Positions 24,178 to 43,300 of a DNA stretch of 64,000 bases are shown here, piece after piece. Below the pieces are notes generated by a model. That model was not told where the DNA came from. It was given only the letters and a program-made list of their open reading frames with translations, and ran no database searches. The translations under genes and the position numbers were made by a program. The first letter of the stretch is position 1, and the number at the start of each line of letters is the position of its first letter. The DNA is taken from NCBI RefSeq assembly GCF_016432865.1, contig NC_067400.1:582552001-582616000 (forward strand). The letters run 5' to 3'. This stretch comes from Antechinus flavipes. Its lineage: Eukaryota.

Positions 24178-24286
24178 CTTCTTCCTCTCGGCATCCTCCT
24201 CATCCTCCTTCTCTTTCTCTTTTTCTTTTTCCTAAACATCGTCATCATGGAGCTCTTCTCCCACACATTCCTGGCCCCAAACCTGG
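24178..24286 (+). other. Candidate upstream exon for the GLIPR1-like cassettes (hypothetical)
   Basis: Acceptor-like GTTTTGTCTTAATCCAG ending 24177, Kozak-context ATCATGG (ATG 24247) and strong donor CTGG|GTGAGT after 24286. No transcript evidence. Confidence 0.3.
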
Positions 24287-25204
24287 GTGAGTCTGCCTGT
24301 CAGCCATGAGAATCCCCAGGATACTGTGCCCTGTGTCCCTAAGGGAAGCAACACTGGCTGTAGAGTCAAAGGACCTGAAATCCAAACCCACCCTAGCCAT
24401 TCACTACCTGTGTGACTCTAGCCAATTGATTCAAGCTATCTCATGCTTCAGCTTCCTCATTTGGAAAATGAGTGTATCATTTTAGATGACTATAGAAGTC
24501 TCTTTGAGTATTGAAATGTATGATCCTGTGAGAAATTAAATGGAAGGGGGAGGTGAGAGGAAGGGGCCCCAGAAAGGATTTCCTCATAACCTGTCAGCAA
24601 ATTCTAGATTTTGAGAGAGTATGGTTGCTTTAGACTTCAGCCATTCCATCTTGTGCTGCTCCCAAGGACGCCTTTCTCCCACCTAGGTACCAGCAATTTC
24701 ACATTGACCTTCCTTTCTGGAAGAAAAGAGATATGTTAAACTAATCCATCTGAGCCTTGGGGGTTTTGGTCATGAAATGTAGATGGGAAGGGGAGCTTAG
24801 AACCTAGGATGTCAGAGGTGGGAGGGCCCTTAAGAACACAGGATGTTAGAGCTGAGAAGGGACACAGAATGTCAGTCTTTGACATTCAAGAATTTCACTG
24901 ACCTCTCATTAAAATGCTAACATTAATAATAAAATGACTAATCATCCAGAAAATGATTCTCAAACTTTTTAAAATTTCATAGTGTTAAAAGTAAAACAAA
25001 GTAACTATGTCCTGTTGCACCAAAGCAACTTCAGTCACCACTAACCAACTTCCACATACAACAGAGTAGTTTCCTCTTGCTAATGCTAGTGGGCTTTCTG
25101 TTGCCTCATAATTGTAGACAGGACACACCCTTCAAATATCCACAAAGATCTGCTGCCTCCTTCTCATTCTGGCAAAGTTTACTGGACATGGGGGTTGGAA
25201 GATC

Positions 25205-26011
25205 ATGGACTCCTGCCTTAAAATTATGATATTTTCACTTTTTTCCATCTGCAACTGGGCATATAAAATAGATACTCTGCCCACCATTGAAAATGAAGCT
25301 TTCATCAAAGAGTGTGTTGACAGTCATAACAAGTTTCGATCACAAGTGACTCCCAAAGCCAGTAACATGTTGCGTGTGAGCTGGGATGCAGATTTGGCCA
25401 AAGTTGCTAAAGAATGGGCGCAGAAGTGTAAGTTTGGACATAACCCTGATCTGAATAAACCCAAAAAGTTGCACCCTACCTTCTCTACAGTGGGAGAGAA
25501 TCTCTGGATTGGCTCAGTTGGATCATTTTCTGAAAATTTTGCCATCAAAACGTGGAATGATAAGGCAAAAGACTATGACTTCCAGAATAAGAAATGTACT
25601 GGGATATGTGGTCATTATACTCAGGTGGTCTGGGCAGAGTCTTACAAGATTGGCTGTGCAGTTCAATATTGCCCCCAAATTGCTCAGTCTTTCATTATCA
25701 ATGGAGTAATTTTTGTGTGTGACTATGGACCAGCAGGAAATTATAATATGCAGCCCTACACGGAAGGAGAACCCTGCAGTGCCTGTAAAGAAGATACCTG
25801 TGTGGATCAGCTGTGTACAAATCCAAAGCGGGATGGAGAGGCTGCAAGTCCCAAGCCAGATGGAGATGCTGCAACTCACAAGCCAGGAACTCAGGAGACA
25901 ACCAAGGGCCGCCACAAAGTTTCTCTTGTTTTAATCTTGGTGCCAATATTTGTTATACTGGCTATCATATTGATCATTGTGATAGTGATAAAGCGTTATT
26001 TCGCAAGGTAA
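25205..26011 (+). CDS. GLIPR1: GLIPR1-like CAP-domain type I membrane protein, copy 1 (class A ectodomain, class-B-like TM/tail), 268 aa, intronless
   Basis: Signal-like N-terminus, LPTIENEAFIKECVDSHNKFRS (resembles GLIPR1 LPDIENEDFIKDCVRIHNKFRS), GENLW, CGHYTQVVW, VCDYGPAGNY, Cys-rich hinge and C-terminal hydrophobic segment. AATAAA at 26022. The symbol means GLIPR1-like paralog. Confidence 0.92.
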   Translation: MDSCLKIMIFSLFSICNWAYKIDTLPTIENEAFIKECVDSHNKFRSQVTPKASNMLRVSWDADLAKVAKEWAQKCKFGHNPDLNKPKKLHPTFSTVGENLWIGSVGSFSENFAIKTWNDKAKDYDFQNKKCTGICGHYTQVVWAESYKIGCAVQYCPQIAQSFIINGVIFVCDYGPAGNYNMQPYTEGEPCSACKEDTCVDQLCTNPKRDGEAASPKPDGDAATHKPGTQETTKGRHKVSLVLILVPIFVILAIILIIVIVIKRYFAR

Positions 26012-27002
26012 ATCATTTCTCAATAAATTTAATCCAAAGGGATGTGGGGATAATATCTTTTAAATGTCCAAACAACAAAAGATTTGTAATTCTGAAAGGG
26101 AAATCCACTCATCAGATTGCCAAAGCTGACAAATAAGAATAATGACAACTGCTGTAGGGACTTCTGGAAAACAAATATATTGAAGCATTGATGGTACAGT
26201 GACTTGGTTTAGACATCTAAAGAGGAACCTTAGAATTCAGGATGTCAGAGCTGGGAAGGCCCTTAAAACATAGGCGGTCAGAACTGGGAGGGCCCTTAGA
26301 ACCCAAGATGTCAGAGCTGGGAGGGCCCTTAGAACCCAGGAGGTCAGAGCTGGGAGAACCCTTAGAGCACAGGATGTCAGAGCTGGGAGGGGCCCTTAAA
26401 ACATAGGTCAGAGCTGGGAGGGACCTTAGAACCTGGAATGTCAGAGCTGGGAAGGCCCTTAGGATACAGGATGTCAGAGCTGGGAGGGCCCTTAGAACCC
26501 GGGAGGTCAGAGCTCAGAGGGCCTTTAAGGACATAGGATTCAGAGCTGGGATAGAGCTTAGAATTTAGAGCTTAGAATAGAGAATGTCAGAGTGGGGAGG
26601 GGCCCTTAAGACATGCTGAAGGGATCCTTAGAACTCAGGATGTCATTCTTTGACACTGACCTCTAATTAAACTATTAACATTAATAATAAAATGACTAAT
26701 CATCCAGAAAATGTCTCTCAAACTTTTTAAATGTCGCAGTGTTAAAAGTAAAACAAGGTAACCATGTCCTGTAGCACCACATAAAAAAGTAACCAGTCAC
26801 CCTTTACCAGGTTCCACATACAATATAAAAAGTAACTTCAGTCACCACTACATCTTCCTCATACAGATAGTAGTTTCCTCTTGCTAATGCTAGTGGGCTT
26901 TCTGTTGCCTCATAATTGTAGACAAGACACACCTTTCAAACATCCACAAAGATCTGCTGCCTCATTCTGGCAAAGTTTGCTGGACACGGGGGTTGGAAGA
27001 TC

Positions 27003-27908
27003 ATGGACTCCTGCCTTAAAATTATGGTATTTTCACTTTTTTCCATCTGCAATGAGGCATATCAGATACTCTGCCCACCACTGAAAATGAAGCTTTCATC
27101 AAAAAGTGTGTTGACAGTCATAACAAGTTTCGGTCACAAGTGACTCCCAAAGCTAGTAACATGATGCGTGTGAGCTGGGATACAGATTTGGCCTTCAGGG
27201 CTAAAAAATGTGCAGAAGAGTGTGAGTTTGAACATAACCCCGAACTGGAGCACCACAAAATGGTGCACCCTGCTTTTTCTTTAGTGGGAGAGAATCTCTG
27301 GATTGGCTCAATTGGAGCATTTTCTGAAAATTCTGCCGTCGAGATGTGGAATGATCAGGCAAAAAACTATGACTTCCAGAATAAGAAATGTACTGGGTTT
27401 TGTAGTCATTACACTCAGGTGGTCTAGGCAAATACTTATAAGATTGGCTGTGCAGTTCAATATTGCCCCAGAGAAGAACACGCTATGTTTTCCCAATGCA
27501 ATAGTGTTTGTATGTAACTATGGACCAGGAGGCAACAATGATGTGCAGCCCTATATGGAGGGAGAACCCTGCAGTGAGTGTCAAGAAGAGTGTGTGGATC
27601 AGCTGTGTACAAATCCAAAGCGGGAGAGAGAGTCTCCAAGTCCCCATCAAGTGAAAGATGATGAAGATCCCAAGCCAGATGATGTTGCAAATCTCATTCC
27701 AGATGAGGTTGCAAGTCACAAGCCAGATGAAGATGCTTCAAGTCACAAGCCAGAAGGAGTTGCTGCAAATCATAAGCCAGATACTGAAGAGACAACCAAA
27801 GGCACCCAGAAATTTTTTCTTGTTTTAATCTTGGTGCCAATTTTTGCTGCACTGGCTATCATATTGATCATTGTGATAGTGATGATAAAGCGTTATTTCA
27901 CAAGGTAA
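27003..27908 (+). pseudogene. GLIPR1: GLIPR1-like copy 2 (class B), disrupted
   Basis: 4-bp deletion after GCATATCA (frameshift) and TGG>TAG at 27425-27427. Confidence 0.9.
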
Positions 27909-28428
27909 ATCATTTTTCAATAAATTTAATCAAAAGGTATTGGGGGATAATGTCATTTTTTAAATGTCTAAACAACAAAAGATTTGTAGTTCAGAAAGGG
28001 AAATCCACTCATCAGATTGCCAAAATTGACAAATAAGAATAATGACAAGTGCTATAGGAACTTCTGGAAAACAAATATAGTGAAGTGTTGATGGTACAGT
28101 GACTTGGTTCAGACATCTAAAGAGGAACCTTATAACATGAAATGTCAGAACTGGGAGAGGATTTGGAATCCAGGATGTCAGAGGTGGGAGGGCCCTTAGA
28201 ACACAAGATATCAGAGGTGGGAGGACCCTTAGAACACAGGATGTTAGAGCTGGGAAGTCCCTTGAAACACAGAATGTCAGTCACTGACATTCAAGAATTT
28301 CACTGACCTCTCATTAAAAAGCTAACATTAATAATAAAATGACTAATCATCCAGAAAATGATTCTCAAACTGTTTAAAATTTCATAGTGTTAAAAGTAAA
28401 ACAAGGTAACTATGTCCTGTTGTACCAT

Positions 28429-29194
28429 ATGAAAAAGCAACTTCAGTCATTATTTTCACTTTTTTCCATTTGCAACTGGGCATATAAAATGGATTCTCTG
28501 CCCACCAGTGAAAATGAAGCTTTCATCAAAGAGTGTGTTGACAGTCATAACAAATTTCGGTCACAAGTGACCCCCAAAGCCAGTAACATGATGCGTGTGA
28601 GCTGGGATGCAGATTTGGCCAAAGTTGCTAAAGAATGGATGCAGAAGTGTAATTTTGAACATAACCCTGATCTGAATATCCTCCAAAAGTTGCACCCTAC
28701 CTTCTCTGCAGTGGGAGAGAATCTCTGGATTGCCTCAATGGGAGCATTTTCTGAAAATTCTGCCATCAAAACGTGGAATGATGAGGTAAAAAAACTATGA
28801 CTTCCAGAGTAAATGTACTCGGGTGTGTGGTCATTATACTCAGGTGGTCTGGGCAGCTACTTACAAGATTGGCTGTGCAGTTTAATTTTACCCCAAAATT
28901 GCGCAGTCTTTCATTACCAATGGAGCAGTTTTTGTGTGTGACTATGGACCAGCAGGAAATTATTATCATATGCAGCCCTACAAGGAAGGACAACCCTGCA
29001 GTGCCTGTAAAGAAGATACCTGTGTGGATCAGCTGTGTACAAATCCAAAGCGGGATGGAGAGGCTGCAAGTCCCAAGCCACATACTGAATCAGCCACTTG
29101 CAGCTACAAATTTCTTCTTGTGATCTTGGTGCCAATTTTTGCTATACTGGCTATTATATTGGCCATTGTGACAAAGCGTTATTGTGCAAAGTAA
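28429..29194 (+). pseudogene. GLIPR1: GLIPR1-like copy 3 (class A), disrupted
   Basis: ~185-bp deletion removes the normal ATG, an A-run frameshift occurs at ~28790, and CAA>TAA lies at 28883-28885. Confidence 0.9.
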
Positions 29195-29954
29195 ATCATT
29201 TCTGAATAAATTAAATCAAAGGGGATGATGGGATAATATCTTTTTAAATGTCTAAACAACAAAAGATTTGTAATTCTGAAAGGGAAATGCACTCATCAGA
29301 TTGCCAAAGTTGACAAATTATAATGACAACTTCTGTAGGGACTTCTGGAAAACAAATATATTGAAGCATTGATGGTACAGTGACTTGGTTTAGACATCTA
29401 AAGAGGAACCTTAGAATTCAGGATGTCAGAGCTGGGAGGGCCCTTAGAACCTAGGAGGTCAGAGCTGAGAGGGCCTTTAAGGACATAAGATTCAGAGCTG
29501 GGATAGAGCTTAGAATTTAGAGCTTAAAATAGAGAATGTCAGAGTGGGGAGGGGCCCTTAAGACATGCTGAAGGGATCCTTAGAACTCAGGATGTCATTC
29601 TTTGACACTGACCTCTAATTAAACTATTAACATTAATAATAAAATGACTAATCATCCAGAAATTGTCTCTCAAACTTTTTAAATGTCGCAGTGTTAAAAG
29701 TAAAACAAGGTAACCATGTCCTGTAGCACCACATAAAAAAGTAACCAGTCACCATTTACCAGGTTCCACATACAATAAAAAAAGTAACTTCAGTCACCAC
29801 TACATCTTCCTCATACAGGTAGTAGTTTCCTCTTGCTAATGCTAGTGGGCTTTCTGTTGCCTCATAATTGTAGACAGGACACACCCTTGAAACATCCACA
29901 AAGATCTGCTGCCTCATTCTGGCAAAGTTTAGTGGACAGAGGGGTTGGATGATC

Positions 29955-30857
29955 ATGGACTTCTGCCTTAAAATTATGGTATTTTCACTTTTTTCCATCT
30001 GCAATGAGGCATATCAAATAGATACTCTGCCCACCATTGAAAATGAAGATTTCATCAAAAAGTGTGTTGACAGTCATAACAAGTTTCGGTCACAAGTGAC
30101 TCCCAAAGCCAGTAATATGATGCGTGTGAGCTGGGATACAGATTTGGCCTTCATGGCTAAAAACTGTGCAGAAGAGTGTGAGTTTGAACATAACGCCGAA
30201 CAGGATCACGAAGATATGGCGCACCCTGCTTTTTTTTTAGTGGGAGAGAATCTCTGGGTTGGCTCAATTGGAGCATTTTCTGAAAATTCTGCCGTCGAGA
30301 TGTGGAATGATCAGGCAAAAAACTATGACTTCCAGAATAAGAAATGTACTGGGGTATGTAGTCATTATACTCAGCTGGTCTGGGCAGATACTTATAAGAT
30401 TGGCTGTGCAGTTCAGTATTGCCCCAAAGCAGACCACTCTATGCTTCCCGATGCAATAGTGTTTGTATGTAACTATGGACCAGGAGGCAATAATGATGTG
30501 CAGCCCTACAAGGTGGGAGAACCCTGCAGTGAGTGTCAAGAAGATACCTGTGTGGATCAGCTGTGTACAAATCCAAAGCGGGAGAGAGAGCCTCCAACTC
30601 CCCATAAAGAGGAAGATGGACATCACAAGGAAGATGTTGCACATCTCATTCCAGATGAGGTTGCAAGTCACAAGCCAGATGAAGATGCTGCAAGTCACAA
30701 GCCAGGAGGAGTTGGTGCAAATCACAAGCCAGATACTGAAGAGACAACCAAAGGCACCCAGAAAGTTTCTCTTGTTTTAATCTTGGTGCCAATTTTTGCT
30801 GCACTGGCTATCATATTGATCATTGTGATAGTGATAAAGCGTTATTTCGCAAGGTAA
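29955..30857 (+). CDS. GLIPR1: GLIPR1-like copy 4 (class B), 300 aa (302 from ATG 29949), intact
   Basis: Complete ORF with CAP motifs (GENLW, SHYTQLVW, VCNYGPGGN), acidic His-rich stalk and TM segment. Confidence 0.92.
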   Translation: MDFCLKIMVFSLFSICNEAYQIDTLPTIENEDFIKKCVDSHNKFRSQVTPKASNMMRVSWDTDLAFMAKNCAEECEFEHNAEQDHEDMAHPAFFLVGENLWVGSIGAFSENSAVEMWNDQAKNYDFQNKKCTGVCSHYTQLVWADTYKIGCAVQYCPKADHSMLPDAIVFVCNYGPGGNNDVQPYKVGEPCSECQEDTCVDQLCTNPKREREPPTPHKEEDGHHKEDVAHLIPDEVASHKPDEDAASHKPGGVGANHKPDTEETTKGTQKVSLVLILVPIFAALAIILIIVIVIKRYFAR

Positions 30858-31585
30858 ATCATTTCTCAATAAATTTAATCAAAAGGGATTGGGGGATAAT
30901 GTCATTTTTAAATGTCTAAACAAAAGATTTGTAGTTCAGAAAGGGAAATCCACTCATCAGATTGCCAAAATTGATAAATAAGAATAATAGCAAGTGCTAT
31001 AGGAACTTCTGGAAAACAAATATAGTGAAGTGTTGATGATACAGTGACTTGGTTCAGACATCTAAAGAGGAACCTTATAACATGAAATATCAGAACTGGG
31101 AGAGGATTTGGAATCCAGGATGTCAGAGGTGGGAGGGCCCTTAGAACACAAGATATCAGAGGTGGGAGGACCCTTAGAATCCAGGATGTCAGAGCTGAGA
31201 GGGCCCTTAGAACCCAGGATGTTAGAGCTGGGAAGTCCCTTTGAAACATAGAATGTCAGTCGTTGACATTCAAGAATTTTACTGACCTCTCATTAAAATG
31301 CTAACATTAATAATAAAATGACTAATCATCCAAAAAATGGTTCTCAAACTTTTTAAAATATCAGTGTTAAAAGTAAAACAAGGTAATTATGTCCTGTTGC
31401 ACCATATGAAAAAGCTACTTCAGTCACCACTACAGCTTCCTCATACAACAGAGTAGTTTCCTCTTGCTAATGCTAGTGGGCTTTCTGTTGCCTCATAATT
31501 GTAGACAGGACACACCCTTCAAACATCCACAAAGATCTGCTGCCTCATTCTGGCAAAGTTTACTGGATACGGGGGTTGGAAGATC

Positions 31586-32359
31586 ATGGACTCCTGCCTT
31601 AAAATTATGATATTTTCACTTTTTTCCATCTGCAACTGGGCATATAAAATGGATTCTCTGCCCACCATTGAAAATGAAGCTTTCATCAAAGAATGTGTTG
31701 ACATTCATAACAAGTTTCGATCACAAGTGACTCCCAAAGCCAGTAACATGATGCGTGTGAGCTGGGATGCAGATTTGGCCAAAGTTGCTAAAGAATGGGC
31801 GCAGAAGTGTAAGTTTGGACATAACCCTGATCTGAATAAACCCAAAAAGTTGCACCCTACCTTCTCTGCAGTGGGAGAGAATCTCTGGATTGGCTCAATT
31901 GGAGCATTTTCTGAAAATTCTGCCATCAGAACGTGGAATAATGAGGTAAAAAACTATGACTTCCACAGTAAGAAATGTACTCGGGTGTGTGGTCATTATA
32001 CTCAGGTGGTCTGGGCAGCTACTTACAAGATTGGCTGTGCAGTTCAATTTTGCCCCAAAATTGAGCAGTCTTTCATTACCAATGGAGCAGTTTTTGTGTG
32101 TGATTATGGACCAGCAGGAAATTATTATCATATGCGGCCCTACAAGGAAGGAGAACCCTGCAGTGCCTGTAAAGAAGATACCTGTGTGGATCAGCTGTGT
32201 GCAAATCCAAAGCGGGATGGAGAGGCTGCAAGTCCCAAGCCACATACTGAGTCAGCCACACGCAGTCACAAATTTTTTCTTCTTCTGATCTTGGTGCCAA
32301 TTTTTGCTATACTGGCTATTATATTGGCCATTGTGACAAAGCGTTATTGCGCAAAGTAA
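31586..32359 (+). CDS. GLIPR1: GLIPR1-like copy 5 (class A), 257 aa, intact
   Basis: Complete ORF with CAP motifs, short stalk, TM segment and KRYCAK tail. Confidence 0.92.
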   Translation: MDSCLKIMIFSLFSICNWAYKMDSLPTIENEAFIKECVDIHNKFRSQVTPKASNMMRVSWDADLAKVAKEWAQKCKFGHNPDLNKPKKLHPTFSAVGENLWIGSIGAFSENSAIRTWNNEVKNYDFHSKKCTRVCGHYTQVVWAATYKIGCAVQFCPKIEQSFITNGAVFVCDYGPAGNYYHMRPYKEGEPCSACKEDTCVDQLCANPKRDGEAASPKPHTESATRSHKFFLLLILVPIFAILAIILAIVTKRYCAK

Positions 32360-33189
32360 ATCATTTCTGAATAAATTAAATCAAAGGGGATGATGGGATA
32401 ATATCTTTTTAAATGTCTAAACAACAAAAGATTTGTAATTCTGAAAGGGAAATCCACTCATCAGATTGCCAAAGTTGACAAATAAGAATAATGACAACTT
32501 CTGTAGGGACTTCTGGAAAACAAATATATTGAAGCATTGATGGTACAGTGACTTGGTTTAGACATCTAAAGAGGAACCTTAGAATTCAGGATGTCAGAGC
32601 TGGGAGGGCCCTTAAAGCATAGGCGGTCAGAACTGGGAGGGCCCTTAGAACCCAAGATGTCAGAGCTGGGAGGGCCCTTAGAACCCAGGATGTCAGAGCT
32701 GGGAGGGCCCTTAGGATACAGGATGTCAGAGCTGGGATAGAGCTTAGAATTTAGAGCTTAAAATAGAGAATGTCAGAGTGGGGAGGGGCCCTTAAGACAT
32801 GCTGAAGGGATCCTTAGAACTCAGGATGTCATTCTTTGACACTGACCTCTAATTAAACTATTAACATTAATAATAAAATGACTAATCATCCAGAAATTGT
32901 CTCTCAAACTTTTTAAATGTCGCAGTGTTAAAAGTAAAACAAGGTTAACTACGTCCTGTAGCACCACATAAAAAAGTAGCCAGTCACCCTTTACCAGGTT
33001 CCATATACAATATAAAAAGTAACTTCAGTCACCACTACAGCTTCCTCATACAGATAGTAGTTTCCTCTTGCTAATGCTAGTGGGCTTTCTGTTGCCTCAT
33101 AATTGTAGACAGGACACACCCTTCAAACATTGACAAAGATCTGCTGCCTCATTCTGGCAAAGTTTAGTGGACAGAGGGATTGGAAGAGC

Positions 33190-34095
33190 ATGGACTCCTG
33201 CCTTAAAATCATGGTATTTTCACTTTTTTCCATCTGCAATGAGGCATATCAAATAGATACTCTGCCCACCATTGAAAATGAAGATTTCATCAAAAAGTGT
33301 GTTGACAGTCATAACAAGTTTCGGTCACAAGTGACTCCCAAAGCCAGTAACATGATGCGTGTGAGCTGGGATGTAGATTTGGCCTTCAGGGCTAAAAACT
33401 GGGCAGAAGAGTGTGAGTTTGAACATAACCCCGAACAGGAACACCACAAAATGGTGCACCCTGCTTTTTCTTTAGTGGGAGAGAATCTCTGGATTGGCTC
33501 AATTGGAGCATTTTCTGAAACTTCTGCCATTGGGATGTGGAATGATCAGGCAAAAAACTATGACTTCCAGACTGAGCAATGTACTGGGGTATGTAGTCAT
33601 TATACTCAGCTGGTCTGGGCAGATACTTATAAGATTGGCTGTGCAGTTCAGTATTGCCCCAAAGCAGACCACTCTATGCTTCCCGATGCAATAGTGTTTG
33701 TATGTACCTATGGACCAGGAGGCAATAATGATGTGCAGCCCTACAAGGAGGGAGAACCCTGCAGTGAGTGTCAAGAAGATACCTGTGTGGATCAGCTGTG
33801 TACAAATCCAAAGCGGGAGAAAGAGCCTCCAACTCGCTATCAAGAGGAAGATGAACATCACAAGGAAGATGTTGCACATCTCATTCCAGATGAGGTTGCA
33901 AGTCACAAGCCAGGTGAAGATGCTGCAAGTCACAAGCCAGAAGGAGTTGCTGCAAATCACAAGCCAGATACTGAAGAGACAACCAAAGGCACCCAGAAAT
34001 TTTTTCTTGTTTTAATCTTGGTGCCAATTTTTGCTGTACTGGCTATCATATTGATCATTGTGATAGTGATGATAAAGCGTTATTTCACAAGTTAA
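33190..34095 (+). CDS. GLIPR1: GLIPR1-like copy 6 (class B), 301 aa, intact
   Basis: Complete ORF from ATG 33190 (the track starts at an upstream TTG) with CAP motifs, long stalk and TM. Confidence 0.92.
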   Translation: MDSCLKIMVFSLFSICNEAYQIDTLPTIENEDFIKKCVDSHNKFRSQVTPKASNMMRVSWDVDLAFRAKNWAEECEFEHNPEQEHHKMVHPAFSLVGENLWIGSIGAFSETSAIGMWNDQAKNYDFQTEQCTGVCSHYTQLVWADTYKIGCAVQYCPKADHSMLPDAIVFVCTYGPGGNNDVQPYKEGEPCSECQEDTCVDQLCTNPKREKEPPTRYQEEDEHHKEDVAHLIPDEVASHKPGEDAASHKPEGVAANHKPDTEETTKGTQKFFLVLILVPIFAVLAIILIIVIVMIKRYFTS

Positions 34096-34794
34096 ATCAT
34101 TTTTCAATAAATTTAATCAAAAGGGATTGGGGGATAATGTCATTTTTTAAATGTCTAAATAACAAAAGATTTGTAGTTCAGAAAGGGAAATCCACTCATC
34201 AGATTGCCAAAATTGACAAATAAGAATAATGACAAGTGCTATAGGAACTTCTGGTAAACAAATATAGTGAAGTGTTGATGGTACAGTGACTTGGTTCAGA
34301 CATCTAAAGAGGAACCTTATAACATGAAATGTCAGAGCGTGGAAAGGATTTAGAATCCAGGATATCAGAGTTGGGAGGGCCCTTAGAACCCATGAAGTCA
34401 GAACTTAGAGGACCCTTAGAACCCAAGATGTTAGAGCTGAGAAATCCCTTGAAACACAGAATGTCAGTCGTTGATATTCAAGAATTTCACTGACCTCTCA
34501 TTAAAATGCTAACATTAATAATAAAATGACTAATCATCCAGAAAATGATTCTCAAACTTTTTAAAATTTCATAGTGTTAAAAGTAAAACAAGGTAACTAT
34601 GTCCTGTTGTACCATATGAAAAAGCAACTTCAGTCACCACTATAGCTTCCTCATACAACATAGTAGTTTTTTCTTGCTAATGCTATTGGGCTTTCTGTTG
34701 CCTCATAATTGTAGACAGGATACACCCTTCAAACATCCACAAAATCTGCTGCCTCATTCTGGTAAAGTTTATTGGACATGGGGGTTGGAAGATC

Positions 34795-36903
34795 ATGGAC
34801 TCCTGCCTTAAAATTATGGTATTTTCATTTTTTTCCATCTGCAACTGGGCATATAAAATGGATTCTCTGCCCACCATTGAAAAGGAAGCTTTCATCAAAG
34901 AGTGTGGTGACATTCATAACAAGTTTCGGTCACAAGCGACTCCCAAAGCCAGTAACATGATGCGTGTGATGTACACCAAGATAAGGTCAAAATGGGTTCA
35001 TGACCTAGGCATAAAGAATGAGATTATAAATAAATTGGAAGAGCATAGGACAGTTTACCTGTGGAAGAGGGAGGAATTTAGGACCAAAGAAGAACTAGAA
35101 TTCACTATTGACCACAACATAGAAAATTTTGATTACATCAAATTGAAAAGTTTTTGTACAAACAAAACAAAGGCAGACAAGATTAGAAGGGAAACAATAA
35201 ACTGGGAAAACATTTTTACAATCAAAGGTTCTGATAAAGGCCTCATTTCCAAAATATATAGAGAATTGACTCTAATCTATAAGAAATCAAACCATTCTCC
35301 AATTGATAAATGGTCAAAGGATATCAACAGACAATTCTCAGACGAAGAAATTGAAACTATTTATAGACATATGAAAATATGCTCCAAATCATTATTAATC
35401 AGAGAAATGCAAATTAAGACAACTCAGATACCACTACACACCTGTCAGATTGGCTAGAATGACAGGGAAAGATAATGTGGAATGTTGGAGGGGATGTGGG
35501 AAAACAGGGACACTGATAGATTATTGGTGGAATTGTGAACACATCCAGCCATTCTGGAGAGCAATCTGAAACTATGCTCAAAAAGTTACCAAACTGTGCA
35601 TACCCTTTGATCCAGCAGTGTTTCTACTGGGCTTATACCCCAAAGAGATACTAAAGAAAGGAAAGGGACCTGTATGTGCCAAAATGTTTGTGGCAGCCCT
35701 GTTTGTAGTGGCTAGAAGCTGGAAAATAAAAGGATGTCCATCAATTGGAGAATGGTTGAGTAAATTGTGGTATATGAATGTTATGGAATATTGTTCTGTA
35801 AGGAATGACCAGCAAGATGAATACAGAGAGGCCTGGCGAGACTTACATGAACTGATGCTGAGTGAAATGAGCAGAACCAGGAGATCATTATATACCTCAA
35901 CAACGATACTGTTTGAGGATGTATTCTGATGGAAGTGGATCTCTTCAATAAAGAGAGCCTTAATTGATCAAAGATGGACAGAAGCAGCTACACCCAGAGA
36001 AAGAACACTGGGAAATGAATATAAACTGCTTGCATTTTTGTTTTTCCCGGGTTATTTCTACCTTCTGAATTCAATTCTCCCTGTGCAACAAGAAAACTGT
36101 TCGGTTCTGCACACATATATTGTATCTAGGATATACTGTAACCCATTCAACATGTAAAGGACTGCTTGCCATCTGGGGGAAGGGGTGGAGGGAGGGAGGG
36201 GAAAAAATCGGAACAGAAATGAATGCAAGGGATAATGCTGTTAAAAATTACCCTGGCATGCGTTCTATCAATAAAAAGTTATTTTAAAAAAATGATGCGT
36301 GTGAGCTGGGATGCAGATTTGGCCAAAGTTGCTAAAGAATGGGCGCAGAAGTGTAAGTTTGAACATAACCCTGATCTGAATGTCCCCCAAAAGTTGCACC
36401 CTACCTTCTCTGCAGTGGGAGAGAATCTCTGGATTGGCTCAATTGGAGCATTTTCTGAAAATTCTGCCATCAAAACATGGAATGATGAGGTAAAAAACTA
36501 TGACTTCCAGAGTAAGAAATGTACTCGGGTGTGTGGTCATTATCCTCAGGTGGTCTGGGCAGATTCTTACAAGATTGGCTGTGCAGTTTAATATTGCCCC
36601 AAAATTGCTCAGTCTTTCATTACCAATGGAGCAGTTTTTGTGTGTGACTATGGACCAGCAGGAAATTATCATCATATGCAGCCCTACAAGGAAGGACAAC
36701 CCTGCAGTGCCTGTAAAGAAGATACCTGTGTGGATCAGCTGTGTGCAAATCCAAAGCGGGATGGAGAGGCTGCAAGTCCCAAGCCACATACTGAATCAGC
36801 CACACGCAGCCACAAATTTTTTTTTCTTCTGATCTTGGTGCCAATTTTTGCTATACTGGCTATTATATTGGCCATTGTGACAAAGCGTTATTGCGCAAAG
36901 TAA
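34795..36903 (+). pseudogene. GLIPR1: GLIPR1-like copy 7 (class A), split by an L1 insertion and carrying a premature stop
   Basis: 5' part 34795-34969 and 3' part 36292-36903, with TAA at 36589-36591. Confidence 0.92.
34970..36291 (+). mobile_element. 5'-truncated L1 inserted in GLIPR1-like copy 7
   Basis: ORF2 C-terminus, 3' UTR and AATAAA. 13-bp TSD ATGATGCGTGTGA at 34957-34969 and 36292-36304. Confidence 0.95.
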
Positions 36904-37893
36904 ATCATTTCTGAATAAATTAAATCAAAGGGGATGATGGGATAATATCTTTTTAAATGTCTAAACAACAAAAGATTTGTAATTCTGAAAGGGAAATCCA
37001 CTCATCAGATTGCCAAAGTTGACAAATAAGAATAATGACAACTTCTGTAGGGACTTCTGGAAAACAAATATATTGAAGCATTGATGGTACAGTGACTTGG
37101 TTTAGACATCTAAAGAGGAACCTTAGAATTCAGGATGTCAGAGTGGGAAGGCCCTTAAAACATAGGCGGTCAGAACTGGGAGGGCCCTTAGAACCCAGGA
37201 TGTCAGAGCTGGGAGGGCCCTTAGGATACAGGATGTCAGAGCTAGGAGGGCCCTTAAAACATAGGTCAGACCTGGGAGGGACATTAGAACCTGGAATGTC
37301 AGAGCTGGGAAGACCCTTAGGATACAAGATGTCAGAGCTGGGAGGGCCCTTAGAGCCCAGGATGTCAGAGCTGGGAGGGCCCTTAGAACCTAGGAGGTCA
37401 GAGCTGAGAAGGCCTTTAAGGACATAAGATTCAGAGCTGGGATAGAGCTTAGAATTTAGAGCTTAGAATAGAGAATGTCAGAGTGGGGAGGGGCCCTTAA
37501 GACATGCTGAAGGGATCCTTAGAACTCAGGATGTCATTCTTTGACACTGACCTCTAATTAAACTATTAACATTAATAATAAAATGACTAATCATCCAGAA
37601 AATGTCTCTCAAACTTTTTAAATGTCGCAGTGTTAAAAGTAAAACAAGGTAACCATGTCCTGTAGCACCACATAAAAAAGTAACCAGTCACCCTTTACCA
37701 GGTTCCACATACAATATAAAAAGTAACTTCAGTCACCACTACAGCTTCCTCATACAGATAGTAGTTTCCTCTTGCTAATGCTAGTGGGCTTTCTGTTGCC
37801 TCATAATTGTAGACAGGACACACCTTTCAAACATCCACAAAGATCTGCTGCCTCATTCTGGCAAAGTTTACTGGACATGGGGATTGGAAGATC

Positions 37894-38796
37894 ATGGACT
37901 CCTGCCTTAAAATTATGGTATTTTCACTTTTTTCCATCTGCAATGAGGCATATCAAATAGATACTCTGCCCACCATTGAAAATGAAGATTTCATCAAAAA
38001 GTGTGTTGACAGTCATAACAAGTTTCGGTCACAAGTGACTCCCAAAGCCAGTAACATGATGCGTTTGAGCTGGGATACAGATTTGGCCTTCAGGGCTAAA
38101 AAATGTGCAGAAGAGTGTGAGTTTGAACATAACCCCGAACTGGAGCACCACAAAATGGTGCACCCTGCTTTTTCTTTAGTGGGAGAGAATCTCTGGATTG
38201 GCTCAATTGGAGCATTTTCTGAAAATTCTGCCGTCGAGATGTGGAATGATCAGGCAAAAAACTATGACTTCCAGAATAATAAATGTACTAGGGTATGTAG
38301 TCATTATACTCAGCTGGTCTGGGCAGATACTTATAAGATTGGCTGTGCAGTTCAGTATTGCCCCAAAGCAGACCACTCTATGCTTCCCGATGCAATAGTG
38401 TTTGTATGTACCTATGGACCAGGAGGCAATAATGATGTGCAGCCCTACAAGGAGGGAGAACCCTGCAGTGAGTGTCAAGAAGATACCTGTGTGGATCAGC
38501 TGTGTACAAATCCAAAGCGGGAGAAAGAGCCTCCAACTCGCTATCAAGAGGAAGATGGACATCACAAGGAAGATGTTGCACATCTCATTCCAGATGAGGT
38601 TGCAAGTCACAAGCCAGATGAAGATGCTGCAAGTCACAAGCCAGAAGGAATTGCTGCAAATCATAAGCCAGATACTGAAGAGACAACCAAAGGCACCCAG
38701 AAAGTTTCTCTTGTTTTAATCTTGGTGCCAATTTTTGCTGCACTGGCTATCATATTGATCATTGTGATAGTGATAAAGCGTTATTTCGCAAGGTAA
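37894..38796 (+). CDS. GLIPR1: GLIPR1-like copy 8 (class B), 300 aa, intact
   Basis: Complete ORF with CAP motifs, long stalk and TM. Confidence 0.92.
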   Translation: MDSCLKIMVFSLFSICNEAYQIDTLPTIENEDFIKKCVDSHNKFRSQVTPKASNMMRLSWDTDLAFRAKKCAEECEFEHNPELEHHKMVHPAFSLVGENLWIGSIGAFSENSAVEMWNDQAKNYDFQNNKCTRVCSHYTQLVWADTYKIGCAVQYCPKADHSMLPDAIVFVCTYGPGGNNDVQPYKEGEPCSECQEDTCVDQLCTNPKREKEPPTRYQEEDGHHKEDVAHLIPDEVASHKPDEDAASHKPEGIAANHKPDTEETTKGTQKVSLVLILVPIFAALAIILIIVIVIKRYFAR

Positions 38797-39591
38797 ATCA
38801 TTTCTCAATAAATTTAATCAAAAGGGATTGGGGGATAATGTCATTTTTTAAATGTCTAAACAACAAAAGATTTGTAGTTCAGAAAGGGAAATCCACTCAT
38901 CAGATTGCCAAAATTGACAAATAAGAATAATGACAAGTGCTATAGGAACTTCTGGAAAACAAATATAGTGAAGTGTTGATGGTACAGTGACTTGGTTCAG
39001 ACATCTAAAGAGGAACCTTATAACATGAAATGTCAGAACTGGGAGAGGATTTGGAATCCAGAATGTCAGAGGTGGGAGGGCCTTTAGAGCCCAGGATGTC
39101 AGAGCTGAGAGGGCCTTTAGAACAGAGGATGTCAGAGCTGAGAGGGCCCTTAGAACCCAGGAGGTCAGAGCTGGGAGGGCCCTTAGAATCCAGAATGTCA
39201 GAGCTGGGAGGGAGCTTAGAATACTGGATGTCAGAAGTAGGAAGGAACACAGAATGTCAGTCTTTGACATTCAAGAATTTCACTGACCTCTCATTAAAAT
39301 GCTAACATTAATAATAAAATGACTAATTATCCAGAAAATGATTCTCAAAGTTTTTTAAATTTCACAGTATTAAAAGTAAAACAAGGTAACTGTCCTGTTG
39401 TGTACCATATGAAAAAGCAACTTCAGTCACCGCTAACCAACTTCCACATACAACAGAGTAGTTTCCTCTTGCTAATGCTAGTGGACTTTCTGTTGCCTCA
39501 TAATTGTAGACAGGACACACCCTTCAAACATCCACAAAGATCTGCTGCCTCATTCTGGCAAGGTTTAATGGACACTGGAGTTTGGAAGATC

Positions 39592-40311
39592 ATGGATTTC
39601 TGCCTTAAAATAATGATATTTTCACTTTTTTCCATCTTCAACTGGGCATATAAAATGGATTCTCTGCCCACCATTGAAAATGAAGCTTTCATCAAAGAGT
39701 GTGTTGATCTTCATAACAAATTTCGGTCACAAGTGACCCCCAAAGCCAGTAACATGATGCATGTGAGCTGGGATGCAGATTTGGCCAAAGTTGCTAAAGA
39801 ATGGGCGCAGAAGTGTAAGTTTGAACATAACCCTGATCTGAATATCCCCCAAAAGTTGCACCCTACCTTCTCTGCAGTGGGAGAGAATCTCTGGATTGGC
39901 TCAATGGGAGCATTTTCTGAAAATTCTGCCATCAAAACATGGAATAATGAAGTAAAAAACTATAATTTCCAGAGTAAGAAATGTACTGGGGTATGTGGTC
40001 ATTATACTCAGGTGGTCTGGGCAGCTACTTACAAGATTGGCTGTGCAGTTCAATTTTGCCCCAAAATTGCACAGTCTTTCATTACCAATGGAGCAGTTTT
40101 TGTGTGTGACTGTGGACCAGCAGGAAATTATTATAATGTGCAGCCCTACAAGGAAGGAGAACCCTGCAGTGCCTGTAAAGAAGATACCTGTGTGGATCAG
40201 CTGTGTACAAATCCAAAGCGGGATGGAGAGGCTGCAAGTCCCAAGCCAAATGCTGAACAGCAAGCTAAAGACAAAAACTTTCTCTTCTTTTCATCTTGGT
40301 GCCAATTTTAG
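39592..40311 (+). CDS. GLIPR1: GLIPR1-like copy 9 (class A), 239 aa from the homologous ATG; frameshifted before the TM (soluble form, pseudogene or consensus error)
   Basis: CAP domain intact. The TM-coding sequence is out of frame (the tail IILIIVAKRHYAR ends at 40366 in another frame). The frame is also open upstream to ATG 39319. Confidence 0.55.
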   Translation: MDFCLKIMIFSLFSIFNWAYKMDSLPTIENEAFIKECVDLHNKFRSQVTPKASNMMHVSWDADLAKVAKEWAQKCKFEHNPDLNIPQKLHPTFSAVGENLWIGSMGAFSENSAIKTWNNEVKNYNFQSKKCTGVCGHYTQVVWAATYKIGCAVQFCPKIAQSFITNGAVFVCDCGPAGNYYNVQPYKEGEPCSACKEDTCVDQLCTNPKRDGEAASPKPNAEQQAKDKNFLFFSSWCQF

Positions 40312-43300
40312 TTTTATATTCACTATTATTCTGATCATTGTGGCAAAGCGTCATTATGCGAGGTAAATTATTTCTGAATAAATTTAATCAAAAGGAATTA
40401 TGGGATAATGTCATCTTTTAAAATGTCAAAACAAAAGATTTGTAATTCAGAAAAGGAAATCCAATTATCAGATTGCCAAAGCTGACAAATAGGGATAATG
40501 ACAACTGCTGTAGAGACATCTGGAAAACAAGTATATTGATGAAGTGTTGATGGTACAATGACTTGGTTCAGATTTCTGAAGAGGAACCTTAGAACTCAGG
40601 ATGTCAGGGCCGGGAGGGCCCTTAGAACCCAGGATGTCAGAAGTGGGAAGGCCCTTAGAACCCAGGATGTCAGAACTGGGAGGACCCTTAGAACACGGGA
40701 TGTCAGAGTTAGGAAGGTCCTTCAAACACAGAATGTCCAAGTCTTAGTCTTCCTTTAAGGTGAAAATGCTTTTCTTCAATAGCAATTTTATTCCAGTTGT
40801 GTTCCCAGAATCACAGAATTTTAGAACTCACAGGACTTTTTCATGGTCATATAGTGCAATCCCTACATGAAAGGAATCTGTATGACAACATACCTGAAAA
40901 GTGGACATTCAGCCTTGGCTGTCATGCAAGATGGCAATCTCTGAGAGGTAAGCCTCGGGAATCAGTTGGGGGACAGGAGAGAGTTTTGTAGTAGGTACAA
41001 GCAAGGATTACAGCCCATTACAAATGTGGAATCACCCTGGAGATTTTGTCTAAAGGATGTAGTCAGAAAAGTATATGGTATGGGGCGGGGAGGGAGAATT
41101 GGGAGGAGGTGCACAAGAGAGATAATAAATGGATAGTTGATGTGGTCTATTGGTATTCATGAAAGGTCAAGAGAATAAGGAGAAGGCCCTCATTTTGACT
41201 GGTAAACATTCAACAACCACCTCCCCAAAAAACTGGGAATGCTTATAAATTTCATCTGCATTAATATTTTCTCCGTCACTTTTTTTAAGTCTAGAAATTA
41301 GTGAAACAATAAATGAAGCTCTGACTTACAGTGTTTGCCAATTTTTTTTTGGGGGGGGGTGTCTAAATGCTCAAATTGAAAATTTAACAAGTGATTTTCA
41401 TGAACCTTTAAAACTGATTTTAGCAAACCCCAAGAAAAGTCTCCAAAATAATGGCTTTAAAAATATGATTTCAAAGTCATTATTTGCCTATTAAACTACT
41501 CCTCCCTTTTCTAACTACCTGAGTTACACCAGAATTTTCTCCATATATTTCAACATATTAAAACAGCTTAAGTACAGAAACAGATATGATACTCTAATTG
41601 TCATATATGAGGTCAAATATTAAAGACATTTGCAAAAATTAAAAAAGCAATGCCATTCTTTGCATTAATTTTTTGGGGAAAATTTTTTTTTAAAATATCT
41701 GTTACTATGCATTGAGATTATTGTCATTTTAATGAATTAATAAGTAATAACTTTAAATATATTAATCTAGTTAAAATTTAATGAATCAAATAGATATTTT
41801 TTAAATTCATATTTTTAATTTCATGTAGTAAATATTGATAGATATAACTCACACAAACAAAAAACTTTTGGAGGACTACAATCATTTTTAAAATAGAAAG
41901 GAGAACTGAGAAAAAGTTCATGATCTACTGTCCTAAATCACTGAAAAGTGGACATTCAGCCTTGGCTGTCATGCAAGATGGCAATTTCTTGGGTAACTCA
42001 GGAGCTTATCCCATTTATTATTATAAGAGCCAATTGTTAAATTTTCAGTATAAGGATTTACAACTCAGAAATCATCAAAATGCTACAAATCAAGGCCTGC
42101 TTTATTGTTTTATGGAGTGTCTAGATTTAACATAGTGATGGAAAAAATATAAGGCTGTTATTGTTATTAGTTCTCAGAGGACAGATGACATCACAAAGAT
42201 GATGTCTTGATTCTCTTCTGAATTGAGGCAGAGCAGTGCAAAGCTGTCAGCCTCACTCTTCCAGTGTTACCAAAGTGGTAAGACAAAAGTCACACTAAAG
42301 TTAAAACTGTGTTTTCCGAGACAGGAGGTAATGGTGCAGGATGGGCAGTCATGTAGAGGTTGTAATCTGCATTCCTGGAGGCAATCCACAATAATGAGAC
42401 CCCAGATCCATCAGAGCATTTGAGGATATGTTGGGAAAAAATAATCCCTGCCCTCAAGGAGTTTACTTTCTGTGGGGAAGATACAACAGTTAAACTGATA
42501 AATAGAAATAAGATAATTTTGGGAAGGGGAGCACTGCATTAGTCTTTTCCCCACAGAAAAGAAGGAATTGAGCAAACAAGACATGATCAGGCATTCAAAG
42601 TCAGTAAACATATGGTGATTAGATCCCAGGGATCCAACTAAATTCACAAGCTTTATCTCAAGATGCAGGGGAATGGCAAACTCCAATGGTACCCCCATCA
42701 CCTCCAAGATCAACAAAAGCCCTTCCTAATCTAGCCCTTTGCCACTTTTCCTTCTGTTATTTCCTTTTTATTCTGTATATAGAGTGGTTGTACATAGTAG
42801 TTTGCATGTTGTCTCCCACACACACATTGTGAGCTTTTTGAAGGCAAGAACTGTCTGCCTCTTTTTGTTTCCCCAGCACATAGTGGGTACTTAAATGTGT
42901 TTTTGTTTGGTTACTGGACAATAATGGAGTTCAAGGTGCTGGTCGTTATGGATTAAGTCTTTGGCAAAAAGGGTAGGGTTAAAAGGCTCAGTCAGTTGAG
43001 GAGACAGAAGGTCAAAAGTGGAACGTACTTACCTAAGCACTCCATAGGACTAAGTCAGGGTTGTAAGGTTTCTTAATTTGTTTTCTTTGTGTAAAAACAT
43101 AAGCCCATAAAGCACCTTTCTCTCAGTGATTAAGGGAAGGCATCTCTCTGCATCCCTACATCCGTATAAAGAGCAGCATCTTCCCAGAGCTGCCTAAGAG
43201 AAAATATTTCTAAATCTGTGAAACATACTTATAAAGCATCTCTTGTGTCCTACCAACCTAAGAACAGTCGCCCTTCTGTCCATGCATAAAAGAAAAGACC

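What the first reader, a model, noticed from the sequence alone, without database searches (positions are those of the whole stretch)
24780..40740. Strictly alternating A/B tandem array of nine intronless GLIPR1-like genes
Seen in the sequence: nine same-strand single-ORF CAP-domain cassettes with ATGs at 25205, 27003, (28429), 29955, 31586, 33190, 34795, 37894 and 39592. They are spaced only ~1.5-1.8 kb apart (longer where the L1 sits) and alternate A-B-A-B-A-B-A-B-A. Each class has its own upstream spacer signature: TGACCTCTCATTAAAATGCTAAC before A and TGACCTCTAATTAAACTATTAAC before B. Established: eutherian GLIPR1 is a multi-exon gene in a small cluster with GLIPR1L1/L2, and CAP proteins act in sperm function and immunity. 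Inference: a retrocopy-derived gene duplicated, diverged into A and B, and the A+B pair was amplified as a unit. Five ORFs stay intact despite many amino-acid changes, which suggests a functional, fast-evolving lineage-specific surface-protein family. I know of no description of such an array but cannot search. No poly(A) tail or TSD of a founding retrocopy is visible, so the retro-origin rests on the lack of introns alone.
Basis: partly seen in the sequence, partly recalled or inferred. Interest (0 to 1): 0.92.

Follow-up and report, generated by a model that had tools for sequence, protein, structure and literature searches.

The report
Dasyurid GLIPR1 orphan-retrogene tandem array
In the yellow-footed antechinus the immune/sperm-related surface-protein gene GLIPR1 survives only as an intronless mRNA-derived copy on another chromosome; that copy has multiplied into nine alternating copies of two types, one of which is evolving unusually fast.

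Summary
Nine same-strand, single-ORF CAP-domain genes lie at 25205-40366 in strict A-B-A-B order, five are intact, and each class has its own upstream signature. The genome is Antechinus flavipes, and NCBI already calls some copies "GLIPR1-like".

- All five koala introns are precisely absent.
- Homology to koala starts about 30 bp after a TATA box, the predicted transcription start.
- The array is on a different chromosome from the ancestral GLIPR1-KRR1 site.
- At that site in Antechinus the stretch holding the parent's last two exons is gone.

The family is not Antechinus-specific. Orthologous arrays with the same flanks exist in the Tasmanian devil (6 copies) and the dunnart (4), and the A/B split predates these species. 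Only the four-fold amplification of a 3.2-kb B+A unit is specific to Antechinus.

Type A is under purifying selection. Type B is acidic with a long stalk, shows omega of about 1 or more with site-model evidence of positive selection, and still keeps its ORF and all 12 cysteines.

Expression and function are untested. No paper found describes the array. The scan noted this same stretch twice before (s1-204751, s1-204813), not on other DNA.

The parts
24247..24288 (+). Small 5' exon of NCBI model P0001 in the unique left flank (14 codons, GT donor), spliced to an AG acceptor at about 25123. It is not conserved: the ATG is GTG in the devil and the donor is lost in the dunnart.
24786..24874 (.). 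33-bp minisatellite remnant directly abutting the 5' edge of the first unit
24875..25204 (+). 5'UTR-derived leader of copy 1. Homology to koala GLIPR1 exon 1 upstream sequence begins here, about 30 bp downstream of the koala TATATAAA box.
25205..26011 (+). Copy 1, A clade (tail ...KRYFAR), intact, 268 aa
   Evidence: 100% identical to P0001
26012..26205 (+). 3' region of the unit. About 95 bp are homologous to the koala GLIPR1 3'UTR; the next ~100 bp match an L1-like stretch in koala. No poly(A) tail.
26228..26640 (.). 33-bp minisatellite spacer. Similar arrays follow every copy: 28174-28280, 29409-29503, 31090-31245, 32577-32737, 34350-34450, 37121-37469, 39030-39235, 40587-40737.
26688..29640 (+). 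B+A amplification unit 1 (copies 2 and 3)
27003..27908 (+). Copy 2, B type, pseudogene (4-bp deletion near 27064, 1-bp insertion near 27488)
28429..29194 (+). Copy 3, A type, pseudogene (~185-bp deletion of the native start, 1-bp insertion near 28788)
29640..32874 (+). B+A amplification unit 2 (copies 4 and 5), used as the reference unit
29955..30857 (+). Copy 4, B type, intact, 300 aa (NCBI model is 302 aa, starting at 29949)
31586..32359 (+). Copy 5, A type (tail ...KRYCAK), intact, 257 aa
32874..37579 (+). B+A amplification unit 3 (copies 6 and 7, including the LINE insertion)
33190..34095 (+). Copy 6, B type, intact, 301 aa
34795..36903 (+). Copy 7, A type. Its only defect is the LINE insertion.
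34969..36291 (+). 5'-truncated LINE-1-like insertion with AATAAA plus an A-run. TSD ATGATGCGTGTG at 34957-34968 and 36292-36303.
37579..40737 (+). B+A amplification unit 4 (copies 8 and 9)
37894..38796 (+). Copy 8, B type, intact, 300 aa
39592..40366 (+). Copy 9, A clade, positional counterpart of the last copy in devil and dunnart. A frameshift near 40258 removes the TM segment only.

Best explanation
The array is a dasyurid family of processed GLIPR1 retrogenes that replaced their parent gene.

Origin. In a dasyurid ancestor one full-length GLIPR1 mRNA, running from the transcription start to about 95 nt past the stop codon, was reverse-transcribed. It inserted into a minisatellite-rich site on what is now the largest chromosome-scale scaffold (CM028219.1). 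The ancestral GLIPR1-KRR1 locus lies on a different one (CM028221.1).

Parent loss. The multi-exon parent then decayed. In Antechinus, at least the stretch that carries its last two exons is deleted.

Expansion. The retrocopy was duplicated in tandem, most likely by unequal crossing-over between the 33-bp minisatellite blocks that flank every unit. This produced at least an A lineage and a B lineage before Sminthopsis split from Antechinus and Sarcophilus. Several A tail subtypes probably also arose by then. In the Antechinus lineage a 3.2-kb B+A unit was amplified to four copies, which gives the strict alternation. Gene conversion, frameshifts and a recent LINE hit show ongoing birth-and-death turnover.

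Proteins. The products are type-I membrane proteins: signal peptide, CAP ectodomain with all 12 cysteines, hinge, stalk, one TM helix and a very short tail.
- Type A stays close to ancestral GLIPR1 and is under purifying selection.
- Type B has an acidic ectodomain and a 56-61 aa acidic, His-rich repeat stalk, and evolves under diversifying selection.

Function (inferred, not shown). Type A carries on the cell-surface CAP function of the lost GLIPR1. Type B is a derived paralogue engaged in a fast-changing interaction, with a pathogen or in reproduction.
For: Identity:
- Pfam CAP.
- The best solved structure is human GLIPR1 (3q2r, E 4e-75), against about 1e-31 for CRISPs.
- Copy 1 is 100% identical to an A. 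flavipes GLIPR1-like protein.

Processed copy:
- The six koala coding exons map contiguously onto every copy.
- Homology begins about 30 bp after koala TATATAAA, and minisatellite replaces the promoter.

Relocation:
- KRR1 lies 2.8-5.6 kb from GLIPR1 in koala, bilby, opossum and sugar glider.
- In all three dasyurids KRR1 is on a different chromosome-scale contig from the array.
- There is no KRR1 in the window.

Parent loss:
- No multi-exon GLIPR1 protein from any dasyurid appears among the hits.
- No GLIPR1 exon lies within 10 kb of KRR1 in the three species.
- In Antechinus, single-copy collinear homology brackets a gap where koala has exons 5-6.

Age: orthologous arrays share unique flanks, and the B clade has 100% support.

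Pair amplification. Mosaicism.

Minisatellite: it flanks every unit and also occurs alone nearby.

Selection:
- A orthologues have omega 0.3-0.65. Alpha-type CAP omega is 0.45, significantly below 1.
- B omega is 1.45 against 0.89 for A (p 0.036).
- B-only M2a beats M1a at p 1.6e-5 over the whole gene and p 0.003 on the CAP domain alone.
- Neutral survival of a B ORF is about 0.5% or less per lineage.
- All 12 Cys are conserved, and the charge and stalk contrast is consistent across species. TM hydropathy.
Against: - No poly(A) tail or target-site duplication of the founder is recognisable.
- The TSS is inferred from one outgroup's TATA box, not measured.
- Parent exons 1-4 lie beyond the DNA I could fetch, so complete loss of the parent is not shown. 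The exon 5-6 deletion is clear only in Antechinus; the devil is confounded by TEs.
- There is no expression evidence. No transcript-derived proteins are in the public collection.
- Omega near 1 for B is also what relaxed constraint gives. The branch tests are only p about 0.04, and the codon tests were home-made.
- Gene conversion is evident, and it inflates site-model tests. The A-clade M2a signal is such an artefact.
- Four of nine Antechinus copies are damaged.
Confidence: 0.8

Rival explanations
1. In-situ intron loss: the native GLIPR1 gene lost all its introns at its own locus (for example by recombination with a cDNA) and then duplicated, with no retroposition to a new site.
For: No poly(A) tail or TSD of a founding insertion is visible. 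Homology extends 330 bp upstream of the ATG.
Against: The array and KRR1 are on different chromosome-scale contigs in three species. Non-dasyurid marsupials keep GLIPR1 2.8-5.6 kb from KRR1. The upstream homology stops at the predicted TSS, and the promoter is not shared. Remnants of intron 4 remain at the old locus.
Confidence: 0.02
2. The array is a decaying cluster of retropseudogenes with no function. Intact ORFs are chance survivors refreshed by gene conversion.
For: Four of nine copies are broken. B omega is near 1 between species. There is no expression evidence. The unit has no conserved upstream exon or obvious promoter.
Against: Intact A and B genes occur in all three species: 5 of 9, 5 of 6 and 4 of 4. 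All 12 cysteines are conserved in all 14 intact genes. A orthologues have omega 0.3-0.65, and alpha-type is significantly below 1. Neutral ORF survival is about 0.5% or less per lineage. The parent appears lost, so these copies are the only GLIPR1 found in dasyurids.
Confidence: 0.08
3. Assembly artefact: the alternation or the copy number results from mis-assembly of fewer real copies.
For: Tandem 3.2-kb repeats with minisatellites are hard to assemble. Only one Antechinus assembly was examined.
Against: Units differ by 4-9%, and each has private indels and one private LINE insertion. There are no N runs in the window. Independent assemblies of two other genera show arrays at the same flanks.
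Confidence: 0.04

Closest known systems
GLIPR1 (RTVP-1), eutherian and non-dasyurid marsupial
   Same: Same domain plan: signal peptide, CAP domain with the same cysteines, hinge, single C-terminal TM. Human GLIPR1 is the best structural relative (3q2r, E 4e-75). Identity to koala GLIPR1 is 71%.
   Different: The dasyurid genes are intronless, sit on another chromosome and are multiplied 4-9 fold. They have split into two types, one of them with an acidic ectodomain and a long repeat stalk. Canonical GLIPR1 is one six-exon gene next to KRR1.
Orphan retrogenes (Ciomborowska et al. 2013, PMC3548309; Carelli et al. 2016, PMC4772013)
   Same: A retrocopy survives while the parental gene is lost in the same lineage, and is presumed to take over the parent's role.
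   Different: The ten mammalian families reported by Carelli et al. mostly gained CpG-island promoters, and the word 'tandem' does not occur in that paper. Here the orphan expanded into a tandem array and one branch is diversifying. Parent loss is shown only for the last two exons in one species.
GLIPR1L1/L2/L3 cluster of eutherians
   Same: Local paralogues of GLIPR1 with CAP domains. GLIPR1L1 acts on the sperm acrosome, and mouse Glipr1l3 is lineage-specific (PMC12917576).
   Different: As I recall (not checked here), those are multi-exon DNA-level duplicates at the ancestral locus. The dasyurid array is RNA-derived, and by sequence it is nearer to GLIPR1 itself than to GLIPR1L1: the GLIPR1L1 hits rank far lower.
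Birth-and-death tandem gene families with minisatellite- or repeat-mediated unequal crossing-over
   Same: Variable copy number between related species, pseudogenes among intact members, mosaic gene conversion, and positive selection in one subfamily.
   Different: The founder here is a processed mRNA copy, and the amplified unit in Antechinus is a heterotypic pair.

Membership tests
CAP superfamily (PF00188) | Significant match to the CAP/SCP domain profile | tested here: met
   E 1.9e-22 to 3.7e-19, all above the gathering score, residues 39-174
CAP superfamily (PF00188) | Conserved His/Glu residues of the CAP cavity | tested here: met
   Identified by eye in the alignment; the motif positions are from my memory of the family. 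GENLW Glu, SEN Glu and HYTQ His are present in all 14 intact genes. The first His (..F.HN..) is present in all A genes and in Antechinus B, but is Asn in devil and dunnart B.
GLIPR1 subfamily | Closest to GLIPR1 rather than CRISP, PR-1 or GAPR-1 | tested here: met
   Human GLIPR1 3q2r at E 4e-75 against 2e-31 for the next hit. Top database hits are all named GLIPR1 or GLIPR1-like.
GLIPR1 subfamily | Signal peptide plus a single C-terminal TM helix (type-I membrane topology) | tested here: met
   One C-terminal stretch with KD19 of 3.3-3.9 in every intact gene, plus a hydrophobic N-terminus. No dedicated predictor was run.
GLIPR1 subfamily | Orthologous position next to KRR1 | tested here: not met
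   Array and KRR1 are on different chromosome-scale contigs in three dasyurids
Processed retrogene | All parental introns precisely absent | tested here: met
   The six koala exons map contiguously onto each copy
Processed retrogene | Copy begins at the parental transcription start and lacks the parental promoter | tested here: met
   Homology starts about 30 bp after koala TATATAAA at L004 9632. The TSS itself is inferred, from one outgroup only.
Processed retrogene | Poly(A) tail at the 3' end | tested here: not met
   No A-run where homology ends, about 95 bp past the stop. This is expected to erode in an old copy.
Processed retrogene | Target-site duplication | tested here: not met
   None was seen at the array edges, which lie inside minisatellite. 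By contrast, the young LINE in copy 7 has a clean 12-bp TSD.
Processed retrogene | Genomic location different from the parent | tested here: met
Orphan retrogene | Parental gene lost or non-functional in the same lineage | tested here: inconclusive
   No GLIPR1 exon within 10 kb of KRR1 in three species, and the exon 5-6 interval is deleted in Antechinus. No multi-exon dasyurid GLIPR1 protein appears in the database hits. Exons 1-4 lie outside the fetched DNA.
Orphan retrogene | Retrogene is expressed and under selection | tested here: inconclusive
   Selection: yes for type A (omega 0.3-0.65). Expression cannot be tested with these tools (one search found no transcript-derived entries).

The most novel reading that the evidence does not exclude
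After replacing the lost parent, the retrogene family evolved a two-component surface system. The near-neutral, short-stalk A proteins and the acidic, long-stalk, positively selected B proteins would act as charge-complementary partners, or as receptor and decoy. That would explain why Antechinus, a genus with extreme sperm competition and male die-off, amplified them strictly as B+A pairs.
Probability: 0.1. Interest if true: 0.75.

Novelty: new member of a known kind. Interest (0 to 1): 0.55.

Why it matters
It would add a marsupial case to the very short list of mammalian orphan retrogenes. It is an unusual one, because the retrocopy then grew into a tandem family with a fast-evolving new subtype. 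The case shows in one locus how an mRNA-derived gene with no promoter of its own can take over from its parent, multiply through flanking minisatellites and diversify.

For marsupial biology, it means dasyurids (including the Tasmanian devil) have no canonical GLIPR1, a p53-linked, myeloid and tumour-related gene. They carry 4-9 variant copies instead, which matters for annotation, for orthologue-based comparative studies and for expression analyses. It also flags errors in current gene models: one chimeric model, and two intact copies (6 and 8) for which I found no exact-matching protein model.

Tried and rejected
1. tblastx and tblastn for KRR1 in the window and in the devil and dunnart array loci found nothing. 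That prompted the search for KRR1 elsewhere.
2. Koala flanks against window flanks gave only TE matches, so DNA-level synteny with koala could not be used.
3. The ~100 bp after the 3'UTR match (26106-26205) first looked like a continuation of the koala 3'UTR. It lies inside an L1-like stretch in koala, so I do not count it as parental.
4. Site-model tests on all 14 genes and on the A clade gave very strong M2a signals. The sites sit in the C-terminal tail, where old subtypes conflict with a tree dominated by the CAP domain. I rejected these results as a recombination artefact.
5. Positional orthology of individual copies could not be resolved. The 5', CDS and 3' trees disagree, so I did not reconstruct an exact duplication order.
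6. The devil KRR1 flank is too TE-rich to say whether the exon 5-6 deletion is shared. The dunnart flank gave no unique matches.
7. Pfam did not recognise the LINE ORF2 tail in copy 7. I call it a LINE from its multi-copy matches, A-run and TSD.
8. A look-up for transcript-derived copies of the proteins found none.
9. A second outgroup for the TSS test (sugar glider) returned no DNA.

Full report
**Observation**

The window holds nine + strand cassettes that each encode a CAP-domain protein in a single ORF. There are none elsewhere in the 64 kb. Pfam PF00188 matches the five intact products at E 1e-19 to 1e-22.

- Intact: copies 1 (25205-26011, 268 aa), 4 (29955-30857, 300 aa), 5 (31586-32359, 257 aa), 6 (33190-34095, 301 aa) and 8 (37894-38796, 300 aa).
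- Copy 2 has two frameshifts.
- Copy 3 lost its native start in a ~185-bp deletion and has a frameshift.
- Copy 7 is interrupted only by a 1.3-kb 5'-truncated LINE-type insertion (34969-36291). The insertion has AATAAA, an A-run and a perfect 12-bp target-site duplication.
- Copy 9 has a late frameshift that removes just the TM segment.

**Whose genome, and what is annotated**

Copy 1 is 100% identical to an NCBI "glioma pathogenesis-related protein 1-like" protein of Antechinus flavipes, on the 636.7-Mb scaffold CM028219.1. NCBI has models for copies 1, 4 and 5, and one 246-aa model that splices copy 2 (27161-27397) to copy 8 (38293-38793). That model is a chimera. The best solved structure is human GLIPR1 (3q2r, E 4e-75); CRISPs follow at about 1e-31. 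Every intact product has an N-terminal hydrophobic leader and one strong C-terminal TM helix.

**Processed origin**

In koala, bilby, opossum, brushtail possum and sugar glider, GLIPR1 spans 13-19 kb. The koala gene has six coding exons. All of them align contiguously to every window copy, so five introns are precisely missing.

Homology also covers about 330 bp upstream of the ATG in A copies (about 270 bp in B). It begins about 30 bp downstream of a TATATAAA box in koala (L004 9632), which is where the koala transcription start is expected. Upstream of that point the dasyurid units carry a 33-bp minisatellite instead of the koala promoter. This is the signature of a full-length mRNA copy, and it is much stronger evidence than the lack of introns alone.

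At the 3' end, homology fades about 95 bp after the stop. The next ~100 bp match an L1-like stretch of koala and are probably an old LINE fragment. No poly(A) tail or founder TSD is recognisable.

**A new chromosome and a lost parent**

In koala, bilby, opossum and sugar glider, KRR1 lies convergent, 2.8-5.6 kb from the GLIPR1 stop. There is no KRR1 in the window.

I recovered KRR1 through its last koala exon. In Antechinus, devil and dunnart it sits on scaffolds of about 300-317 Mb (CM028221.1, CM109178.1, CM109185.1). The arrays sit on the scaffolds of about 637-657 Mb.

No GLIPR1 exon is found in the 10 kb beyond KRR1 in any of the three species. In Antechinus, single-copy sequence collinear with koala continues from KRR1 into what is GLIPR1 intron 4 in koala. 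The koala interval 26150-28581, which holds exons 5 and 6, the stop codon and the start of the 3'UTR, falls between adjacent Antechinus positions (L005 34460/34461). No multi-exon dasyurid GLIPR1 protein appears among the database hits.

I conclude that the parent is at least truncated and probably gone. Exons 1-4 lie beyond the DNA I could fetch, so complete loss is not shown.

**Age and growth of the array**

The devil and dunnart loci share the window's unique flanks at 85-90% identity. They hold six copies (order A, A, B, B, A, A; the first is broken) and four copies (all intact) respectively. In the CDS tree the B clade (Antechinus 2, 4, 6, 8; devil 3, 4; dunnart 2) has 100% support. A and B therefore diverged before these genera split. 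The family is dasyurid-wide, not Antechinus-specific.

Class A is heterogeneous. By tail and 3' flank, copies 3, 5 and 7 go with devil 2 and dunnart 1. Copy 1 goes with devil 5 and dunnart 3 (by C-terminal tail; its 3' flank does not agree). Copy 9 goes with the last copy of the other two arrays. Trees of the 5' region, CDS and 3' region disagree, and all devil copies share an identical N-terminus. Both point to gene conversion.

Within Antechinus the 3.2-kb B+A unit 29640-32874 aligns end to end, spacers included, with 26688-29515, with 32874-37289 (minus the LINE) and with 37579-40737, at 91-96% identity.

Every unit is bounded by the 33-bp minisatellite. The minisatellite also precedes the first copy in all three species and stands alone at 14.9, 60.7 and 62.0 kb in the window. 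From this I infer unequal crossing-over between minisatellite blocks as the duplication mechanism. This is inference, not shown.

**Selection**

Pairwise NG86 estimates:
- A orthologues between species: omega 0.3-0.65.
- B orthologues between species: 0.8-1.3.
- Young Antechinus B paralogues: 1.4-3.2 (whole CDS).
- All copies against koala: 0.3-0.55.

PAML and HyPhy were not available, so I wrote GY94+F3x4 likelihood code and checked it against Biopython's ML estimator.
- The three-ratio model gives omega 0.43 on the koala/stem branch, 0.89 within A and 1.45 within B. Both B=1 and A=B are rejected at p 0.036.
- For the B clade alone, whose tree matches the species tree, M2a beats M1a at p 1.6e-5 on the whole gene and p 0.003 on the CAP domain only. 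Candidate sites are concentrated in alignment columns 68-96 and 131-165.
- The alpha-type A orthologues have omega 0.45, significantly below 1.
- The very strong M2a signals in the A-only and all-gene sets sit in the mosaic C-terminal tail. I reject them as recombination artefacts.

Omega near 1 could also mean decay, so I estimated neutral survival from the flanks. The probability that a 900-bp ORF stays open is about 0.5% or less per lineage, or 20-30% counting stop codons alone. Yet B is intact in all three species, and all 12 cysteines are conserved in all 14 intact genes.

**Proteins**

- Type A: the CAP domain has net charge -5 to +2, and the stalk is 16-26 residues (44 in one dunnart gene).
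- Type B: the CAP domain has net charge -11 to -15 (pI 4.7-5.1). The stalk is 56-61 residues of acidic, His-rich 9-residue repeats encoded by a 27-bp repeat.

The segment after the first conserved Trp-Asp is +4 in Antechinus A and in koala, and -3 to -8 in Antechinus B. The shift is weaker in devil and dunnart.

**The shared-first-exon idea (s1-204751)**

NCBI's 309-aa model adds a 14-codon exon from the unique flank (24247-24288), spliced to an AG at about 25123 inside the leader. The exon's ATG is GTG in the devil, and its donor is lost in the dunnart. Five of six devil copies lack the AG. Conservation gives the idea no support. Only cDNA data can settle it for Antechinus.

**Literature**

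Full-text searches found no description of a marsupial GLIPR1 array or retrogene. GLIPR1 is absent from the A. flavipes genome paper (PMC9290055), from a marsupial immune-gene annotation paper (PMC9618407) and from a dasyurid comparative-genomics preprint. The only marsupial mention is a bandicoot thymus EST (PMC1802078). Orphan retrogenes are a known but small class, with ten mammalian families in PMC4772013.

**Verdict**

This is a real, well-defined locus. The claim that the family is lineage-specific is corrected to a dasyurid-wide family with an Antechinus-specific pair amplification. The closest fit is an orphan retrogene family with birth-and-death tandem evolution, and both processes are already known. 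Function and expression remain untested. I rate interest as moderate.

Noticed in passing
window 43752-48439 (to about 48924): A 4.7-kb GC-rich (59%), strongly strand-skewed satellite of CGCTCT / CTCGCTCTCGCA units, followed by (TCTCTT)n. It lies just beyond the part of the right flank that aligns to the fetched devil locus, which ends there.
   Followed up: no
window 14899-15090, 60662-60911, 62033-62270: The 33-bp minisatellite of the array spacers also occurs on its own. At 62270-62420 it runs into a MIR/MAR-like SINE body, so it may be an expanded SINE head. That resemblance is from memory only.
   Followed up: partly
window 34957-36303: A young LINE-type insertion in copy 7 with a perfect 12-bp TSD (ATGATGCGTGTG), AATAAA and an A-run. 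Copy 7 has no other defect, so it was probably inactivated recently.
   Followed up: yes
window 28380-28470: In copy 3 a ~185-bp deletion fuses an ATG from the 5'UTR-derived leader in frame to the signal-peptide core. This creates a new, plausible signal peptide, but the copy is frameshifted further on.
   Followed up: partly
window 39592-40366: Copy 9 keeps an open CAP domain and stalk, but a frameshift near 40258 removes the TM helix. It is either a pseudogene or a potential secreted form. Its devil and dunnart counterparts keep the TM.
   Followed up: partly
window 27161-27397 + 38293-38793: NCBI protein XP_051844258.1 (P0010) is a chimeric model joining copy 2 to copy 8 across 11 kb. No exact-matching protein model for intact copies 6 and 8 is in the collection.
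   Followed up: yes
L002 12464-14990: The two devil B genes are 99.6% identical, so the duplication is very recent. All six devil copies share an identical N-terminal 40 residues, a sign of strong local gene conversion.
   Followed up: partly
L005 34460-34762: At the ancestral locus in Antechinus, the sequence next to the exon 5-6 deletion junction is tandemly duplicated (~150 bp, 82% identity).
   Followed up: no
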